Source of the DNA: Trichosphaerium sp. ATCC 40318 | Taxonomy: Eukaryota; Protista; Tubulinea | Length of the DNA stretch: 64,000 bases | Reading direction: 5' to 3' | NCBI GenBank assembly: GCA_038496445.1 | Contig: JALMLS010000374.1 | Location: forward strand, 222,004 to 286,003 | Part shown: in pieces, positions 19,563-28,500 of the stretch | Numbering within the stretch: the first letter of the stretch is position 1 | Layout: each line of letters opens with the position of its first letter | Position numbers and translations under genes: made by a program | The notes under the pieces: model-generated | Database searches by the model: none | What the model saw: only the letters and a program-made list of their open reading frames with translations | What the model was told of the DNA's origin: nothing

Positions 19563-20226
19563 TGGATGAGGTGTTTAATTAGTTTGAGTAGATGAATTAT
19601 GAGTTTTTGAAACTCGTGTAGTTTTTGTCAACGAGTAGTCGTGTAATTCTCAGAGTTTCATTTTTAACGTCTCAGGCAAACATGCTGTGGTGCCAATGTG
19701 AACGTAATTGAAGCGGTTTGAAGCTGTTTTCGGAGAAAAGGAAATCGTACGAACGTTTTATTAATTCCAACAACCTATCCTACGCGCAGAGAATACACAC
19801 TGTAGTTCTAGCCACATTTTGTAATATGTATAACAATACACACTCATAGCTTTTTCATGTACCGTAAGCAACTTTTTCTATATTCTAAAGGACTTAGTAT
19901 GGAACAATGAATAAAAACGGTTGGTTGCACGTGAAGTTTTTGAGTGAGTACTTTATCGACAAACTGTAAGATACCCAAGGCTATTGCCAAGTGCAAACCA
20001 ATAGCAAGGACACCAGTTTCTTCACAAAAGAGAACTATACTTAGTACTCATGCACGTTCAAGTAATGTGTATTTCTGTTGATGTTGCTACACCCACTAAT
20101 GTTAATATCACGTACACTTGCCTTGAGATCTTCACCAATGATTTTTGTGAACGATAACTCAATGGAATGTACTTTCTATGGTTGCTTAAACACAACTTGG
20201 ATTTAAGACACTGGGCAAAGGGTACC

Positions 20227-21105
20227 ATGATCCCCACGCGTATCAAAGCTAACCTCAGAAATAACAACAAGAAAACAGCAACGACAGTAATAAACAAAGC
20301 ACTACCTAACGAGATTATTACTTATATTCTGGACTACAACAATGAAAAATCAAGTCTATTCACCTACTTGATACTCTCCAAAGGCTTTGAAAGGTTTATA
20401 AAATCAAAAGGGTCGTATTGGAGAAACATGTATCTCTCTTTATATGCCACAGGAGAATACGATGAAGCTGGAATGCTTGTTGAACAGCATATACGTTGTA
20501 TTCTTGATGCTAAGTTTAATGATTTCTTCGAAGTACCAACACGTGATTTTGCCAATTCTCACAAACAATCAGAAAGTGTCACGTGTCAAAGTGAAAGAGA
20601 CTCTAAATGTCGCTTAAAATATTGGAAAGATAGATGTCATAACATTAAGATTGCTTCATCACTTGCCAGGCATCTTGATAGCTTTGTTTTTCCATTCTAC
20701 AATGAATTCTGTGTACCAAAGTTTACTCCTTTTCTTATATTTGTAGAAGAAGAACAGGATGATGTCATAGGAGAACATACACTGTTAAACATGCTCAGAA
20801 AATATGAACCAAATGAAAAGTTCTATAAACAAATGGACATTAAAGCATTTTCTGAGTATGTCAGAAAACCTGAGATATTAAACCCACTCCAAGAGATTAT
20901 AGACAAAAAAATATGTGGATTGGAAAATATAACATGTCTCAATTATACCAAAGGAGGCCAGTTTTATATGATACATAGTACATCACCTATAACAAAGGCA
21001 ATTGTAGGTATTTTCCTTATTGAAGATTATACAAGCTGTGGCAATGGAAGCTTCAATGAGTACTATCGCAAAAAACATGAAGCAGGCTGGCAAATCCCAC
21101 AGTAA
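20227..21105 (+). CDS. F-box domain protein, intronless
   Basis: ALPNEIITYILDY...LILSKGFERFI...YWRNMY F-box; long uninterrupted ORF. The upstream in-frame ATG at 20167 is an alternative start. Confidence 0.7.
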   Translation: MIPTRIKANLRNNNKKTATTVINKALPNEIITYILDYNNEKSSLFTYLILSKGFERFIKSKGSYWRNMYLSLYATGEYDEAGMLVEQHIRCILDAKFNDFFEVPTRDFANSHKQSESVTCQSERDSKCRLKYWKDRCHNIKIASSLARHLDSFVFPFYNEFCVPKFTPFLIFVEEEQDDVIGEHTLLNMLRKYEPNEKFYKQMDIKAFSEYVRKPEILNPLQEIIDKKICGLENITCLNYTKGGQFYMIHSTSPITKAIVGIFLIEDYTSCGNGSFNEYYRKKHEAGWQIPQ

Positions 21106-21248
21106 AATAACTAGATGATTGGGCTATGTGTCAAAGATAAATCCCTCAATGACAGTAATTATGGAAACAATGTATCAAACAACAATAAACAAGTTTTTTT
21201 CAAAAAACAACAAAATCTATTATTTTTTTTCCATTGTTTTTTTTTCTG

Positions 21249-24200
21249 TTAAAGCCACTGTAATTCAAGTATATTGACCTCCTGAAGAAGGATGTTATTC
21301 TGTGACTCGTCAAAAGTTGCTGGCAAAGGCATTCCTTGAAATAAAAAGTAAGTACACAAAACACTAAGAGTCAAAACAACAGACTGTTTTCAACTTCGTT
21401 TTTTAGTCCAAAAACAAAAAGAAAATCTATTATATCATTATTGACAATACCTTTTTTAACCCTTGCTGCTAATAGTACAGCGGTAGTCCATTCCTCAAAG
21501 TTGAGTTGGCTATCTTTGTCTCTATCCGAAAGACCCCTACAACACAAAATGAGTCAAACTTTTTTTTGGTCTTTTTTTTGTCTTTTTTTTGTTTGACTAT
21601 CAACTCAGGCCGTTTTTCATCACAAGGGCCAAAATAGCACTTATCCCTACGTACCAAATAGTTGCCAGATTTTGGTGATCAAGACCACTAGCTAGCAAAG
21701 CATCTCTGGCTTCAACACCACTAACAAAACCAGGTCTTGTAGTGCCTATTGTTACAAACTTTTTCTTTAATAAATCTAATACTTGATCGCGTGCAGAAAC
21801 CATAGGTGTAGAAACGCTTTAAAAAAACAAAAAGTCAGCCAAAGACTTACTTGGACTCGAGAAACTTGCAGAACAAAGAAAAAAAGAATTTGACAAAAAA
21901 CGCGTTATGAGGTTCAGGAAGGGTCACGCAAATGCCCTTCCCCAAAGTATCTACACTGATACCACACGAAGGAGGTATTTTCCGAGCGCAAGGATGGTTT
22001 TCATCATCACCACAAAAAAAACGTTTTCCGTGATTTTTTTGATTACGTTGCTAGTCTACAAAAACGTACCCAATGCCACTACCACCACGCAAAGACGCCA
22101 AAACAGAGGCAGGTACAGTATCAGGTAATTCAATACTCTTCTTTGCAAGGTTGATCAAATGGGTAGCAAGCATAAATTCAGTCTTGTTGAGATAGTTGTC
22201 TTGATCCATGTCGGACAGACTCCATACCTACATAGACTTTAGCTAAAATACCTATACAATACACTACACACCTTTGCGAGGATATTAACGCCAAGACCAG
22301 TACGCATAAACAACGCACGAGCAGTATTGCCCGAAACTCTACCATCAGCCTCTTTGGGTGTTTTATCGTAAATAGCTGTATACTGAGGGATAGCCTACGG
22401 GGTTTGTGAACGTCTGGCTTTCAAATGAAACAAACCACTTCCGGCCTGCGTTTACGTACATCTGCTGGTACTTCCATTGGACTAGAAGGCTCCTGAGGAG
22501 CTGCTGCAGGTTGAGGTACTTCCGCTTGGTCGGGGAAAACCATCAACGCTGATTCTGGTGCTTTAGCATGCTCTGGAGCTGGAGCAAAGGAGCTCCCAGC
22601 GGCCATGTTAGGCTCAGCTTTATCCTACAGCAAATTAAAAAAACCCACAATAGAAATGCCTTTTAACCCATACCATGCTGCTTCCAGTGGTTCCTTCCAT
22701 TGACAATAGATCAGATTGTTGTAAAGCAGAAGTACCAGTATGAAGGAACGCATCAAGGTCTTCTTTTTGCTGAGAAATAAAGTCGTCTCGGCGCTTAGCA
22801 AGCTGTTCTTCAAATTTCTTACGTTCGTCGTTCAAAACGGCATCAAATTTTTCCAAGTCGACACGTTGTTGAGCTTGGAAAGCGTCTTTAGACACAAATT
22901 CCTAAAGGAAATAAGTAAACGCCTGATCTGGGGGCTTTTTTTCAAAAAACAGAGCCATCAATCCTACCTGTGGCAATTTATCAGGTTTAAGTCTAGCAAG
23001 GATCAACTGAGCTAATTGACTGTCTTGTAAAACGTTATGGCAATGAGCCACCAACTTAGTTTCATCTAGTTCAACAGATAGTACCTAATAAAAGCAGTAA
23101 GTACCTCAGTAATACAAGATGTATAAGAATAACGCACTTGACCTGTTTGGTTCACTAATACAATACCACCTTCTGGCGTTGCAGCTGTTGTAAATGTAAC
23201 AGATGGATCTCCTGTTCTAATAACACCCAATGGCGTAGCTGTTTCCACCTAATAAGATAACATTAATTTCTCCATCAATGAGACTTCTTTTTTATCGCGT
23301 AGTGACAGCATACTACGCGTCATGATGAAAAGTGCACGGTTTTTAAGAACGACTCTACTCACCTCATAAGCGGAGATATAACCATGCTTTGTAACCATAA
23401 ACACAACACCATACTTTTCACTAAATTCTAAGCCAACTGGGAAATCATCTGGGGCATCTGGGGCATAGTACACTGGACAACTACGTTTCTTTGATGTACC
23501 AAGCGTAAATATACGTAACTAAAGCCAAACAAATAAGCAAACAAAGAAATGAAAAAAAAAAAAATAAAAAAATATCCACATAGACTTGATAAACGTACTT
23601 TTCCATTACCATCAGCATCGCGTATAGCAAAAGCAAATATGGTATTACCTAGTAACGATGTTTAAATGAATCCCAAACAGAAAGGAAAAAGGAAAAAAGA
23701 GAAACAAAAAAAACCAAAAATTATTTTCTTGCAATTCCAAGTAGTAGTGTTTGTTTACCTCCAAATCTACCAAAACATGTTGCGTGAGCATCAATCCCTT
23801 GAGACATTTTTCTGTTCTTGCTAAAAAGTTGTGCACGCCCAGAAATCAGTTTAGTACCAGCCTAAAAGAGATGTCACATTCACAACTAATTTTCCTTCTC
23901 AAACGAAAACAAAAAAATCCCAAAAAAACGTACAGCAGGTGGTGCAGCACCAACAAGGCAACTCCATTGCCCATCAATAGACACATCGTAATTTAATATT
24001 CTACAATCCTTAACTTTTGAGCCAACATCACAAAATTTCTGGAGCGCTTCACCGTCTAACAATAGAAGTTAACACCCAAAACAAACGCGCATGGTGGGAA
24101 AAAAAATTGTGATTGGCGCGTAAACGAAAAGAGAAAAAAAAGACAAAAAAATTGCTCGTTTTTAGATAGATTTACAGTTAGATTGGTAATAATTACCTTG

Positions 24201-25324
24201 TTTGTTCCAGTGGTACACTGCGGTGTTTGTTACAATACCAATAGTATTATTGTTCACCCACTTCCAAAATAAAACGTTATCCAATGAAGTCGTATTTAAA
24301 CGATTTCTTGTATCAGTTTCGAATACTTGTAGCCATGATCCGGCTAAAAACGTATAAGTCAAGAATATACGGAATTATCCTCTCAATTTTTTGAAAAAGA
24401 AATAAACCCAAACAAAAACCATTAGAGTCGCTATACTATACTCTCAAACACAATCCAGACAATTTATAAAATAGGACAGTTAAATTGAAAAAAAAAAAAA
24501 AAACAAATTGGGCGAAATATGCGTACAACGCAGAGCGAGTATCTTGGAGGTAGGGTGGTTGAGTACTGAGTTGACTTGCGATAGTATAGTTGTGCGTGAA
24601 ACTTGAGGTTGGGCACCTGGACAGAGTATTTTAGCATTTAAGTATTACTAATGTTAGAATGAACCTGAACCAGGCTTTAAATCTACGATAGTTGCCGTAG
24701 GTTGTCCATTAAAGTTTTGCTTTGCACAAAGAAAACGATACGAGCTTAGCGTCACATCACCGTATTTCTTTAGAGTGTCTGTAGAGATTTCGAGTTCAGT
24801 AAGCTGAAATAAACAGATTAGCAGGCAAAAAAGACGAAAGAAAAAAACAGTCAGCTCGAAACCAGTTTGTTTGGTCGTAAATCCTTTATAAATCGCTTAT
24901 TATTGATCACACGCTAAGCACGCGGCGATACAAAACGAGGTACAAACGCCGAGAGCTAAAACAGCGAAAAGAAAAAAACCAAACCAATACAATAAATACC
25001 TTGGCAAGTTCGACGCAATTAACAGGCAAATCAGCGGCTACAGGCTATATAAAAAGGGTCAATGAGTACGAAATTAAAAGAGAGGCTGGAAATAAAAAAT
25101 AACTAAAATTGAGCAGTTATAGTGATTTGCTGTTAGCAGGACATTTCCGAAGAGGGTAACAGCGTAAATGTGACATTTATTTTTGCCTGCACGAAAGGGT
25201 GCTGCTGATTTTGTGCAAATAAGGGAGAACAGCGCAATCAAATCCACAAGTCTGTAGATGAGCTACACGAACAAAAAACAAGAGCAAAACGAAAAATAAA
25301 ATTAGCTTATACCTGTTGTGCCAT
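21249..25324 (-). CDS. Clathrin heavy-chain terminal domain + linker fused to a coiled coil and two EH domains (about 700 aa, 18 exons)
   Basis: Spliced translation follows clathrin heavy-chain residues ~1-360 (NHPTSKILALR, LQVF, VLFWKWVNNNTIGIVTNTAVYHW, SQGIDAHA, DDFPVGLEFSEKYGVVFMVTKHGYISAYEVET, GIVLVNQTGQVLSVELDE...NVLQDSQLA). Then a coiled coil, a P/A linker, EH1 (VSGNTARALFMRTGL...LAKVWSLSDMDQDNYLNKTEF...LPDTVP) and EH2 (VSGVEARDALLASGL...LATIWGLSDRDKDSQLNFEE...GMPLP). TAA 21251-21249. Confidence 0.88.
21908..22014 (-). ncRNA. Intronic box C/D snoRNA-like RNA, candidate U6 snRNA guide
   Basis: Lies in the intron between EH1 and EH2. Box C ATGATGA (22007-22001), D' CGGA (21984-21981), ATACC/GGTAT hairpin, C'-like GTGTAGA, box D CTGA (21917-21914), terminal stem TGTGGT/ACCTCA. 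CATCCTTGCGC and ATTTGCGTG are complementary to conserved U6 GCGCAAGGAUG and CACGCAAAU. Confidence 0.7.
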
Positions 25325-25534
25325 GATGGCGAATGGTTCTTCACTGTATTTAGGCTCTGGCTTGACAAAAAAACAGCTCGTTTCGCACTAAAATTGACTT
25401 CGTTTCTGGGGAATAAAACTGCGTGTTCTAAATAGTATTTATTTTTAGCGTTCGCTGTTTAAACAGCGTTAGCATAAAGAGACATCAATTGGGAAAAAAC
25501 AAGTGATAATTTGATCCCGTTTAAACTTGTTATC
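25325..25534. promoter_or_regulatory. Short head-to-head intergenic region, probable bidirectional promoter
   Basis: Only about 210 bp separate the divergent ATGs at 25324 (-) and 25535 (+). Confidence 0.45.
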
Positions 25535-28500
25535 ATGTCCAACTATTACAAATACACAACCATACCAAAAGGCATCAAAGTAGTAAACTTTAAAGAGGCT
25601 AGCGTGACGGATGGTAAAGATTATTTTGCTGGTACGTATTGATTGCCTGTTTTTGGCCTTAATTTGCGTTTTCCCGTTGAACTATTAGCGGTATATGTTA
25701 TTTAGAGGTCCTTTTGCTTCTCTTGTTATTAGTTTAACTGATTCGTTTCGATCAGAGTTTGAAGAAGAGCACAAGCTTAATGAAAGCCCTGACGCGTTAA
25801 AAACCGATAAACCAGTCCTGTCAGTAAAGGGTATGCATCTAACGTCATTGACATTTTGCTAACAAATTGTTTACACCAGTTATCGCATGCCAAGAGCTTA
25901 TGGCTGTCGATCAAAGCACACTAGCAGACGCATACGTCATGCTAGAATTGCATGGCACAAAATTCAAAACAAAAACTGTGAAAAAGACTCTTGAGCCTAT
26001 ATTTAAACAAACATTCGTGTTGTACGCACTTTAAAGCAAGAAAAATCCTTTTTGACACCAAAAAACCGTTTTATGACTTTTTAAACTGCTCTAACAAAAT
26101 CATAGTGACATTGATCCTAATAAATACAATGAAATGGCTGTATACGCTTATTCTAGCGCAAAATTACGAGCAGATGATTTTCTTGGTGTGGTGTATTTAG
26201 ATCTCGCTGATATATTAAAAGATAGTCCAAAGGTATGACACGTGAGAGAGATGGAGTACCAGCTTTCATATTTTTTTTTTTCGCGTTAAAGTTTTTTTTT
26301 TGTATTTTTTTGTACGCCTCAAGAGGTGTTTTACGATATTGCTGTGTTTTAATATTTACGTACCTATAGGTAAAGGACTGGTATGAGTTTACACCAAGGA
26401 CATGGGGCGAACCTGTGCGTGGTGAAGTCCATCTCAAGTTCGAAACAAATACTAAATTAATACCTCAAATTCCTGTTCGGTATGTCCTTGTTTTTTGTGC
26501 CTTTGGTTATTGCAATGATAAATAATACTTTTCTTTCTAGCGAGCGTAAAAAGGGTATTTTCGATTTAGATCGTAAGTCACGTGATTTTTTGGTTTTTTT
26601 TTTATTTTAACGACAAGCTGATTGTTTCTTAGTCACGGAGGCTCAGCGTGTTGAGATACTTAGACCAGAGGCTAAACCGAGTCATGCACACTTGGTACAA
26701 GTGACCAAAACAGGGGAATCGTTATTAAAGTTTATAAAACTACTTACAGGTACGAGGCCAGTTTATACTCTGTATGTTGAAAACCAGAAATATGGTTCTT
26801 TATTACGTTTACTTCACGGCTACTCTATATCTTCCGAAATACATTTTTCGCTAAATTTGCTACAAATGAATTTCAGCGCCAATCAAAAAAATCACTGACT
26901 TTTTGGAAAGATGCAGAAAGTTAAACTTGTAACTTGTTTCTCACTTCTTTTTTAAGTTATCTCCTCCGCTTGTCTAATCCATTTTTAGCTGACATGACAT
27001 CTGCTGCTGATGAAAAACCTGCATCTGTAGCTCCTGTTACCACTCCAGAAAAGAGGAAACGAATCAAGTACGTGTTATGAAGAAGACCAAGCTCTTATTA
27101 TATATTGGTTCTTTATACCTATTTCTTTTAATTTATATGGTTCCATTTAAATCGTTCGCATATGTATTATATAGCTAGAAGGCGGAAAAACACGTTACGA
27201 AACTCATTCTTGAGAGGGTGGGCATCTTTTTTTTTTACCGTCCTTTGCAGACATTTTAAGTAAGGCTTCTTTAAGATAGGAGTACAAATTGACATTTTTT
27301 GTCTTTTTCAAATGTACCATTTGTACTCTTATTGTAGTGTGTGCGCAATCTAGCGTTTATATTCTAATTTAACACGTTGTTCGTTTATATGTTGCATATA
27401 AATGAAGTAGCCTTGCTTATTGTCTTGTCAATCGCATAGATTAAAAAGGTTATTAACAATACCTTTCAGTTCTTTGTTCCGATCAAGAAAGCCTAAAGGA
27501 CCTCAATGGTCTTTTGTCATGGAAGAGGATTGGTCAAAAGATAGCGGTGGTAAAGATGAACCAGTTGTATCAGAGGGTGCTTCTGGATTACCCGAAGAGG
27601 TACTTGAGTGTCATAACAGAACAGATCGACTAACTTTTTTGTATTAGCTTTTGTACAATGTTTTTCTCTTCTTGAATGCAATGCAGAGGATCAATGCTTC
27701 AAGAGTTTGCAGGCAATGGTGTCGTATTTTGGGTGATAGGTAGGTTTCTACCACAGTAGTTGATTAAGCGTTAACATACTTGTTTTAGTTCCCTAAAGGC
27801 GCCTGCAGTAGAATGTTTAGAGCTCATACAACTGGTACATAATTTTTTTTTTGTAGGTGTTGTTCACTAAAAATCTCTTTTAGGCCGCTGCAAATAATGA
27901 TCCCAATACAATAAACAAAGCGTGTGAAAAGATATTACCTATTATTGTATGTCTTGATAATATAGTAGCGTGGAACGCTACAGGATACAGTGAGTTATCT
28001 TTCTTTTCCTTTTTTTTTTTTTTCTATTACCCTTTTTTTTTTCTTCTTCTTCTAATGCTTTTGAAGCTCAGTTTGGTTTCAGTCATGAAAATATTTTGTC
28101 TGTATGTGAAAAAATTGCACTGGTTGATGCTTTGATGGCTTATGTTGAGTTATTATGTCGATATGATATGTGGTTGGTACGTAAACAATAAATGTGTTTT
28201 TTTTGTTTACTGATACTTTTTTTTTTCGTAGAAAAGCCTTGGTGCTATTTGTCCTCAGATTAAGAGTTTATTTACCTTCTTTGAAAATAATCAGTACGTC
28301 ATAGTTATAAGAAATAATGTTTTGTTTAATTTTATTATAGTGGGACAGCGATGCTTGGAACGTCAATCGAAGCGTATGATGTACTAAAGATCAAGTATGA
28401 AAAAAAATAATTGTGGAGTGTAAACTGATTTTTTTCCCTAAAGGCTTGACTTCTCGTTTTGGTCGTCCTTGAATGGATTCTTCTCTTTAAATTCAATGAT

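What the first reader, a model, noticed from the sequence alone, without database searches (positions are those of the whole stretch)
21249..25324. Legless clathrin: clathrin terminal beta-propeller fused to a coiled coil and two EH domains
Seen: an 18-exon GT-AG gene whose first ~365 aa follow clathrin heavy-chain residues ~1-360 motif by motif (propeller plus alpha-zigzag linker). It then switches to a coiled-coil segment, a Pro/Ala linker and two complete EH domains with the NPF-pocket Trp (LAKVWSLSD, LATIWGLSD). Clathrin-box groove residues look retained (KILALR..LQVF..RNR versus human KVIALK..LQIF..KSK). Known: the terminal domain binds clathrin-box adaptors, EH domains bind NPF motifs, and lattice assembly needs CHCR legs and the trimerisation domain, which are absent here. 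Inference: a non-lattice scaffold that cross-links the two main endocytic motif networks, oligomerising through its coiled coil, or a competitive regulator of clathrin. I do not recognise this architecture from model organisms.
Basis: partly seen in the sequence, partly recalled or inferred. Interest (0 to 1): 0.88.

Follow-up and report, generated by a model that had tools for sequence, protein, structure and literature searches.

The report
Clathrin head fused to EH domains
This amoeba makes one expressed protein that joins the adaptor-gripping head of clathrin, without clathrin's cage-building legs, to a long helix and two EH domains, a combination I found described nowhere; its role is untested.

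Summary
On the minus strand, 25324..21249, 18 exons with 17 GT-AG introns splice into a 699-aa reading frame. Single spliced contigs from public runs of independent studies (2165 and 2128 nt) carry the whole coding sequence, including every junction between the clathrin-like part and the EH part.

- **Clathrin part:** residues 8-356 align collinearly with clathrin heavy chain 4-355 (propeller plus first linker helices; E 9e-82). Nothing resembling clathrin legs follows, in the gene or anywhere in the 64-kb window.
- **Rest of the protein:** one long predicted helix (about 369-435), a Pro/Ala-rich linker (441-495), and two EH domains that keep the pocket Trp and EF-hand loops.
- **Divergence:** the propeller is about 32% identical to canonical ones, which share about 52% with each other. 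It keeps the tested clathrin-box and arrestin-box residues but has changed W-box and Royle-box residues.

Most likely it is a soluble, probably oligomeric endocytic scaffold that binds both clathrin-box and NPF motifs. This is inferred, not shown.

I found no relative with this architecture and no paper describing it, but my searches had limited reach. Whether the genome also has a normal heavy chain was not testable. The scan also noted this same stretch in an overlapping window (s1-404260).

The parts
21249..25324 (-). Whole gene: 18 exons, 2100-nt CDS, 699 aa, from the ATG at 25324 to the stop at 21251-21249
   Evidence: Model built. Spliced contigs of 2165 nt (X8) and 2128 nt (X2) span it.
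22968..25324 (-). Exons 1-11 (aa 1-364): clathrin heavy-chain terminal domain (seven-blade propeller) plus the first linker helices
   Evidence: PDB phmmer hits on exons 5 and 9. blastp 1e-58 to canonical heavy chains. Custom heavy-chain profile aligns aa 8-356 to positions 4-355, E 9e-82. Alignment.
22674..22901 (-). Exon 12 (aa 365-440): the tail of the clathrin-linker similarity, then one long amphipathic helix (about aa 369-435) that may drive oligomerisation
   Evidence: AlphaFold2 on a single sequence gives a helix over residues 5-71 of the exon, mean pLDDT 86. Best heptad register has 62% strong hydrophobics at a/d over 28 residues. The junction to exon 11 is seen in X1, X2 and X8.
22695..22709 (-). 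LLSME (aa 429-433), the only match in the protein to the clathrin-box pattern L-hydrophobic-x-hydrophobic-[DE]; it lies at the helix/linker border
   Evidence: Regex scan. Such a motif arises in 48% of whole-protein shuffles but in 1.3% of shuffles of aa 426-495 alone, a post hoc test.
22460..22624 (-). Exon 13 (aa 441-495): Pro/Ala-rich linker, probably disordered (24% Ala, 20% Pro)
   Evidence: Composition. No Pfam hit.
22070..22394 (-). Exons 14-15 (aa 496-588): first EH domain, with pocket Trp (LAKVWSLSD) and EF-hand loop DMDQDNYLNKTE
   Evidence: Pfam EH PF12763 at 27.9 bits against a cut-off of 22. PDB EH domains of intersectin-1, REPS1, EHD1 and Eps15.
21249..21816 (-). Exons 16-18 (aa 589-699): second EH domain (about aa 596-690; LATIWGLSD; loop DRDKDSQLNFEE) and a short C-terminal tail
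   Evidence: 42% identity to the first EH domain over 65 aa, E 8e-12. Weak piecewise hits to EF-hand_1 and Eps15 EH3.

Best explanation
This is a real, expressed gene for a 699-aa cytosolic protein. It is a highly diverged paralogue of the clathrin heavy-chain terminal domain, cut off after the first linker helices. A long helix, a disordered Pro/Ala linker and two EH domains follow. It has no CHCR legs and no trimerisation domain, so it cannot build a clathrin lattice.

Most likely it acts as a soluble, multivalent endocytic scaffold of the Eps15/Ede1/intersectin kind. The propeller would bind L-hydrophobic-x-hydrophobic-[DE] (clathrin-box type) peptides of adaptors through its retained clathrin-box and arrestin-box grooves. 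The EH pair would bind NPF peptides. The helix would pair copies to raise avidity. Depending on dose, such a protein would either cluster adaptors before or without clathrin, or compete with clathrin for them.

Shown here: the gene structure, its expression as one spliced mRNA, the domain homologies and the residue retention. Inferred: peptide binding, oligomerisation and the endocytic role.
For: - Gene and transcript. Single contigs of 2165 and 2128 nt from different studies hold the whole spliced CDS. The introns between the clathrin and EH parts are only 49-66 nt, leaving no room for a second promoter.
- Terminal domain: (E 9e-82; homology ends at about aa 356-385).
- No clathrin leg sequence anywhere in the window: tblastn of full-length heavy chains hits only the propeller exons. 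The flanking genes are a divergent + strand gene starting near 25536 and a convergent ORF at 20167-21105.
- Peptide-groove residues defined by mutagenesis in PMC5182127 Table 2: Q89, F91, Q192, W164 and L183 are all identical, and K96/K98 become Arg. This is against only 54 of 91 highly conserved columns kept overall.
- EH domains. Both keep the pocket Trp and EF-hand loops of canonical form (read).
- Helix.
- Strain differences in the contigs are 6 synonymous to 3 non-synonymous, with none in the propeller exons. This is weak evidence for purifying selection.
- Precedent: PMC5182127 fused the clathrin terminal domain 1-363 to an oligomerising coiled coil (NEMO) to obtain avid peptide capture, which is the same design principle.
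Against: - No binding, oligomerisation or localisation data exist.
- The propeller is very diverged: 28-34% identity, and a branch of 2.7-3.4 substitutions per site against a median of about 0.23. It may have changed specificity.
- Invariant W-box residues are changed (Q152R, I154L, F27Y), as is Royle-box F9 (to Cys). R64 of the clathrin-box region is Thr.
- The heptad pattern of the helix is only moderate and rich in Phe, so a coiled coil is not established.
- Retention of 5 of 5 groove residues has a chance probability of about 0.07 given the 59% background. That is suggestive, not significant.
- No orthologue was found, so conservation across species, the best sign of function, is missing.
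Confidence: 0.55

Rival explanations
1. Competitive regulator or decoy. The protein's main role is to occupy clathrin-box motifs on adaptors, and NPF motifs on accessory proteins, so that real clathrin is kept off. It would act as a brake or buffer on coat assembly rather than as an assembly platform.
For: It keeps the two grooves that bind the same peptides as clathrin and lacks everything needed for lattice formation. Its own linker carries one clathrin-box-like motif, LLSME, which could also engage genuine clathrin or fold back on its own propeller.
Against: The same features fit a positive scaffold equally well. Two EH domains and a long helix are typical of assembly-promoting scaffolds (EH-EH-coiled-coil proteins, PMC4824007). 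Nothing in the sequence tells the direction of the effect.
Confidence: 0.25
2. A neofunctionalised propeller. The terminal-domain fold is kept only as a scaffold, and its ligand specificity has moved away from clathrin-type motifs. The protein would then work in an EH-dependent process unrelated to clathrin adaptors, or be a young, drifting lineage-specific fusion with little function.
For: The branch is very long and identity about 32%. W-box and Royle-box residues have changed and 37 of 91 conserved columns are lost. No orthologue was found. Earlier notes of this scan, unchecked by me, report many unusual domain fusions in this genome.
Against: The reading frame is intact over 18 exons and is expressed in runs of several studies. 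All five tested clathrin-box and arrestin-box residues are retained. Differences between strains are mostly synonymous.
Confidence: 0.15
3. Artefact. Either two neighbouring genes were merged by the model or by transcript assembly, or a misassembly joined a truncated heavy-chain gene to an EH gene.
For: Assembled contigs cannot prove a single RNA molecule (caveat printed).
Against: Contigs of four runs from four studies give identical junctions. The frame is continuous. Introns 11-13 are 49-66 nt with canonical splice sites. The clathrin-linker similarity runs about 10-20 aa past the exon 11/12 border (envelope to 385; a blastp alignment reaches aa 375). Genomic and RNA-derived sequences agree.
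Confidence: 0.04

Closest known systems
Clathrin heavy chain (CHC17/CHC22, Chc1, chcA)
   Same: N-terminal seven-blade terminal domain and first linker helices, collinear from the initiator MAQ to about residue 356. The tested clathrin-box and arrestin-box residues are kept.
   Different: No ankle, distal or proximal CHCR repeats, no light-chain site and no trimerisation domain, so it cannot form triskelia or lattices. The propeller is far more diverged than any canonical one sampled. W-box and Royle-box residues are altered.
EH-EH-coiled-coil ('EEC') endocytic scaffolds: Eps15, intersectin, Reps, Ede1, Pan1 and their protist counterparts (PMC4824007)
   Same: Two EH domains with the NPF-pocket Trp, a long helical segment and a disordered region, which is the parts list of a multivalent early endocytic scaffold.
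   Different: The order is reversed, with helix before EH domains and the EH domains at the C-terminus. There are no DPF/DPW/FxDxF AP-2 motifs and no NPF. It has an N-terminal clathrin-type propeller, whereas EEC proteins outside opisthokonts are reported to have no additional globular domain.
Engineered His-NTD-NEMO (clathrin terminal domain 1-363 fused to an oligomerising coiled coil), used for peptide-capture assays in PMC5182127
   Same: Terminal domain cut at nearly the same residue and followed directly by a helical, possibly oligomerising segment. In the engineered protein this raises avidity for clathrin-binding peptides.
   Different: That construct is artificial. The protein here is natural, carries EH domains as well, and its oligomerisation is unproven.

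Membership tests
Clathrin heavy chain | N-terminal seven-blade beta-propeller terminal domain | tested here: met
   Profile of 18 canonical N-termini: aa 8-356 align to positions 4-355, 261 bits, E 9e-82. PDB hits.
Clathrin heavy chain | Peptide-binding grooves of the terminal domain (clathrin box, arrestin box, W box, Royle box) | tested here: inconclusive
   Clathrin-box Q89/F91 and arrestin-box Q192/W164/L183 are identical. W-box Q152R/I154L/F27Y and Royle-box F9C are changed (residue list from PMC5182127). Sequence only, no binding test.
Clathrin heavy chain | CHCR repeat legs (ankle, distal, knee, proximal) | tested here: not met
   The heavy-chain profile 1-650 finds nothing after aa 385. 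tblastn of 1693-, 1202- and 1052-aa heavy chains on the whole window hits only 23135-24764. blastp of the C-terminal half (aa 357-699) against the 78 clathrin-like proteins fetched gave no significant match.
Clathrin heavy chain | C-terminal trimerisation domain and light-chain binding region | tested here: not met
   The protein ends at aa 699 with EH domains. A stop codon at 21251-21249 is present in the transcript contigs.
EH-domain endocytic scaffolds (EEC type: Eps15/intersectin/Ede1/Pan1) | Two or more EH domains with the NPF-pocket Trp and an EF-hand loop | tested here: met
   First EH domain: Pfam PF12763 at 27.9 bits against a cut-off of 22 and PDB EH domains. Second EH domain: 42% identical to the first, E 8e-12. 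Trp and loops read.
EH-domain endocytic scaffolds (EEC type: Eps15/intersectin/Ede1/Pan1) | Coiled coil that oligomerises the protein | tested here: inconclusive
   One helix of about 67 residues predicted with pLDDT 86. Heptad a/d occupancy is only 50-62%. Oligomerisation is not testable here.
EH-domain endocytic scaffolds (EEC type: Eps15/intersectin/Ede1/Pan1) | N-terminal EH-EH followed by coiled coil (domain order) | tested here: not met
   The order here is propeller, helix, linker, EH, EH. The EEC order is taken from PMC4824007.
EH-domain endocytic scaffolds (EEC type: Eps15/intersectin/Ede1/Pan1) | AP-2 appendage-binding motifs (DPF/DPW, FxDxF, WxxF) in a disordered tail (Eps15 type) | tested here: not met
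   The regex scan found none.

The most novel reading that the evidence does not exclude
This is a previously unrecognised class of endocytic accessory protein: a natural 'clathrin-head hub'. An oligomer would display several clathrin terminal domains and EH domains, read the same adaptor motifs as clathrin and the NPF network at once, and organise or gate coat initiation without forming a lattice. Its own LLSME motif could allow head-to-tail self-association or coupling to genuine clathrin.
Probability: 0.3. Interest if true: 0.72.

Novelty: new variant of a known kind. Interest (0 to 1): 0.6.

Why it matters
In known biology the clathrin terminal domain occurs only as the foot of a lattice-forming leg. 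A natural protein that uses the domain alone, joined to EH domains, would show that adaptor-motif reading can be separated from cage building. It would also give a ready-made tool and test case for how multivalent motif networks start or limit coated-pit formation, the question now studied with Eps15/Fcho condensates and engineered terminal-domain oligomers. If it is only a lineage-specific fusion in one fusion-rich amoeba genome, its reach is narrower. It would still be a clean natural experiment on which of the four terminal-domain sites stay under selection once the lattice function is gone: here the clathrin box and arrestin box are kept, and the W box and Royle box are not.

Tried and rejected
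- **Pfam on single propeller exons:** no hits, because the pieces are too short. PDB phmmer and a self-built profile replaced this test.
- **Whole-protein tools:** the spliced protein has no reference, so whole-protein Pfam, a structure prediction of the propeller and exact-sequence look-ups could not be run. Only exon 12 was folded.
- **Exhaustive representative search with exon 9:**
  - It gave 78 hits and none close to the query.
  - Every hit that extends beyond the propeller continues as clathrin ankle or as frameshift junk.
  - The two most model-like fragments were traced to contigs. P0025's contig continues into a Clathrin_H_link hit, so it is canonical. P0063's 592-bp contig carries only that fragment and says nothing either way.
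  - A 52-aa query is insensitive. Only one full-length heavy chain passed the threshold, so this negative result is weak.
- **Word-indexed search with a canonical terminal domain (proteins of 383-1218 aa):** none of the best 120 of 201 hits carries Pfam EH. Diverged propellers would be missed.
- **Two metagenome scans, with exons 12 and 9:** nothing for exon 12, and two 19-aa matches for exon 9 that I treat as chance.
- **P0001 as a possible source gene:** it is the best exon-9 hit and shares YAPDAP, TKHGY and DGQW with the model, so I considered it as this organism's own heavy chain. I rejected that because its contig has 60% GC and 90% GC3, against 31% GC3 here. Its sister position to the model in the tree is unsupported (62/80).
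- **Terminal-domain phylogeny:** the placement of the model is unresolved because of the long branch, so an ancient origin cannot be told from a recent, accelerated one.
- **A 14-nt micro-exon inside intron 15:** rejected because it breaks the frame, and the contigs join 22070 directly to 21816.
- **Paper searches:** five searches found no description of this architecture.
Full report
**1. The gene**

Reading the minus strand of 20800-25800 and splicing at GT..AG sites gives 18 exons:
- 25324-25313
- 25044-25000
- 24803-24665
- 24616-24527
- 24343-24197
- 24055-23934
- 23861-23759
- 23648-23599
- 23518-23363
- 23248-23138
- 23084-22968
- 22901-22674
- 22624-22460
- 22394-22272
- 22227-22070
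- 21816-21655
- 21536-21451
- 21334-21249

The 17 introns are 44-268 nt. The CDS is 2100 nt and encodes 699 aa without a stop. A candidate 14-nt micro-exon inside intron 15 breaks the frame and was dropped.

Upstream, a gene on the other strand starts near 25536 (read). Downstream, a convergent ORF at 20167-21105 has a faint F-box-like hit. The gene is therefore bounded on both sides.

**2. Expression as one spliced message**

Public runs hold 0.2-0.35 of the sampled words of the 4.4-kb stretch, which is about what exon-only sequence would give. I laid contigs of four runs from four studies on 21100-25500.
- 15 joints appear, each CT..AC on the + strand, at exactly the model's introns.
- These include the critical joints 22968|22901 (propeller/linker to helix), 22674|22624, 22460|22394, 22272|22227, 22070|21816, 21655|21536 and 21451|21334.
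- One contig of 2165 nt (X8) and one of 2128 nt (X2) cover all exons.
- Their record coordinates leave exactly 275 nt between exons 5 and 9, which equals exons 6+7+8, so intron 8 is also removed.
- Depth in the bin 25216-25362 equals 38-39 nt of exon 1 plus 5' UTR, with zero depth over intron 1.
- X1's two contigs meet at the exon 15/16 junction: the loose end at 21817 is the reverse complement of the end of exon 15.

Assembled contigs cannot prove single molecules. However, introns 11-13 are only 49-66 nt and the frame is continuous, so separate genes are very unlikely.

Nine differences between strains lie in the CDS. Six are synonymous and three are not (T615S, A399T, E396G). None lies in the propeller exons.

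**3. The clathrin part**

- Exon 5 alone matches clathrin heavy chain 85-132 (E 1.5e-9) and exon 9 matches 245-286 (E 8e-10) among solved structures.
- The spliced protein matches canonical heavy-chain N-termini at 1e-44 to 1e-58 by blastp, collinearly from residue 6 to about 350.
- A profile I built from residues 1-650 of 18 canonical heavy chains aligns model 8-356 to profile 4-355 (261 bits, E 9e-82). The envelope reaches 385 and nothing matches beyond it.
- tblastn of three long heavy chains against the whole 64-kb window hits only 23135-24764.

So the protein keeps the propeller and the first linker helices (…GQVLSVELDETKLVAHCHNVLQDSQLAQLILARLKPDKLPQ) and then leaves the clathrin plan.

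The propeller is unusually diverged. It is 28-34% identical to 25 canonical terminal domains, which share a median of 52% with each other. In maximum-likelihood trees its branch is 2.7-3.4 substitutions per site, against a median of about 0.23, and its position is unresolved.

**4. Peptide-binding sites**

I used the residues mutated in PMC5182127, Table 2, and a 26-sequence alignment.

| Site | Residues in the model | Note |
|---|---|---|
| Clathrin box | Q89 and F91 identical; K96 and K98 become Arg | The flanking residues I66 and L82 are kept and R64 becomes Thr; that these three line the groove rests on my recollection of the structures |
| Arrestin box | Q192, W164 and L183 identical | R188, also from my recollection, is kept |
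| W box | Q152 becomes Arg, I154 becomes Leu, F27 becomes Tyr | All three are invariant in the 25 canonical sequences |
| Royle box | F9 becomes Cys, E11 kept, Q14 becomes Lys | The blade-7 motif NRISxDTIFVT is rewritten |

Overall 54 of 91 columns that are at least 90% conserved are kept. The pattern suggests selective retention of the two grooves that take L-hydrophobic-x-hydrophobic-[DE] peptides. Five of five against a 59% background has a chance probability of about 0.07, so this is a lead, not proof.

**5. The rest of the protein**

- **Exon 12 (aa 365-440)** folds in AlphaFold2, from a single sequence, as one helix over its residues 5-71 (mean pLDDT 86). The best heptad register places strong hydrophobics at 50-62% of a/d positions, many of them Phe. 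A coiled coil is plausible but not established.
- **A clathrin-box-like motif.** At the helix/linker border lies LLSME (aa 429-433), the only match to the clathrin-box pattern in the protein. By chance it is expected in about half of whole-protein shuffles, but in 1.3% of shuffles of the disordered stretch alone.
- **Exon 13 (aa 441-495)** is 24% Ala and 20% Pro.
- **First EH domain.** Exon 15 hits Pfam EH above its curated cut-off (27.9 against 22 bits) and solved EH domains of intersectin-1 (2.4e-7), REPS1, EHD1/2/4 and Eps15.
- **Second EH domain.** The last 110 residues are 42% identical to the first EH domain over 65 aa (E 8e-12).
- **Pocket and loops.** Both copies keep the L…L..W.LSD pocket string and an EF-hand loop with D, D, D at positions 1, 3, 5 and E at position 12 (read). 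That these residues form the NPF pocket and the calcium loop rests on established knowledge of EH domains.
- **Other motifs.** No NPF, DPF/DPW, FxDxF or W-box motif occurs in the protein.

**6. Relatives and literature**

- The exhaustive search of 1.84 billion representatives with exon 9 gave 78 hits and none close to the query.
- Every hit that extends beyond the propeller continues as clathrin. The most model-like fragment, P0025, is followed on its contig by a Clathrin_H_link hit. The second, P0063, sits alone on a 592-bp contig that shows nothing beyond the fragment.
- The collection does contain amoebozoan transcriptomes, for example Gocevia and Rhizamoeba.
- A search with a canonical terminal domain among proteins of 383-1218 aa listed 120 proteins, none with Pfam EH.
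- Metagenome scans with exons 12 and 9 found nothing credible.
- Five paper searches found no description of this architecture.
- PMC4824007 describes EH-EH-coiled-coil proteins as the conserved eukaryotic scaffold, without further globular domains outside opisthokonts. The protein here reverses that order and adds the propeller.

All these negatives have limited sensitivity: the queries were short, the word-indexed search misses diverged sequences, and only the top hits are listed. I can say 'not found', not 'absent'.

**7. How it most likely works**

It has no legs and no trimerisation domain, so it cannot form a lattice. This step follows from the established roles of the CHCR legs and the hub.

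What remains is a propeller that probably still binds clathrin-box type peptides at two grooves, a helix that may pair copies, a flexible linker and two NPF-binding modules. That is the parts list of a multivalent early endocytic scaffold. The terminal domain takes the place that AP-2-binding motifs hold in Eps15.

The engineered NTD-NEMO fusion of PMC5182127 shows that oligomerising the terminal domain raises peptide capture. Whether the natural protein promotes adaptor clustering or competes with clathrin cannot be told from sequence.

I give the scaffold reading 0.55, the decoy or brake reading 0.25, a re-purposed or drifting propeller 0.15, and an artefact 0.04.

**8. What I could not do**

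- The spliced protein has no reference in this tool set, so whole-protein Pfam, a structure prediction of the propeller and multimer modelling were not run.
- Whether the genome also encodes a canonical heavy chain was not testable. It is expected from what is known of amoebae, but it was not shown.
I did not test this.
- Other notes report many unusual domain fusions in this genome. If that holds, it tempers the surprise of any single fusion.

**9. Verdict**

The architecture claim is supported and the function is inferred. This is a new arrangement of known endocytic modules, so far seen in one organism. Interest 0.6.

Noticed in passing
window 21817-22069 (intron 15, minus strand), especially 21908-22014: This 253-nt intron, the longest but one in the gene, contains a GTGATGATGA (C-box-like) and a later CTGA (D-box-like) element. 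Another reader of this scan noted it as a candidate intronic C/D-box RNA (s1-404419). My Rfam scan of 21000-25600 gave no family match there at E <= 1. The laid contigs have no depth over 21835-21981, as expected for libraries that do not capture small RNAs.
   Followed up: partly
window 21538-21627 (intron 16, minus strand): Weak Rfam match to the C/D-box family snoR35: 22.3 bits against a gathering score of 40, E 0.18. It is probably chance. The intron is also rich in A-runs.
   Followed up: no
window 21560-21594, 23525-23580, 23681-23721, 24476-24514: Long T/A homopolymer-rich tracts inside introns attract hundreds-fold contig depth and loose poly-A/T ends from unrelated contigs in X2 and X12. 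This is an artefact of low complexity, not expression.
   Followed up: partly
window 25325-25600: A divergently oriented + strand gene appears to start near 25536 (MSNYYKYTTIPKG…), only about 210 nt from this gene's ATG. That suggests a shared bidirectional promoter region (read).
   Followed up: no
window 20167-21105 (+ strand): A convergent 312-aa intron-free ORF ends about 140 nt from this gene's stop codon. It has a faint F-box-like Pfam hit (E 0.0077, below the cut-off).
   Followed up: partly
L005 (Logan contig of P0001): A GC-rich (60% GC, 90% GC3) clathrin terminal-domain exon from another organism shares several otherwise unusual residues with this protein (YAPDAP, TKHGY, DGQW). It is its weakly supported sister in the tree. 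The organism is unknown.
   Followed up: partly
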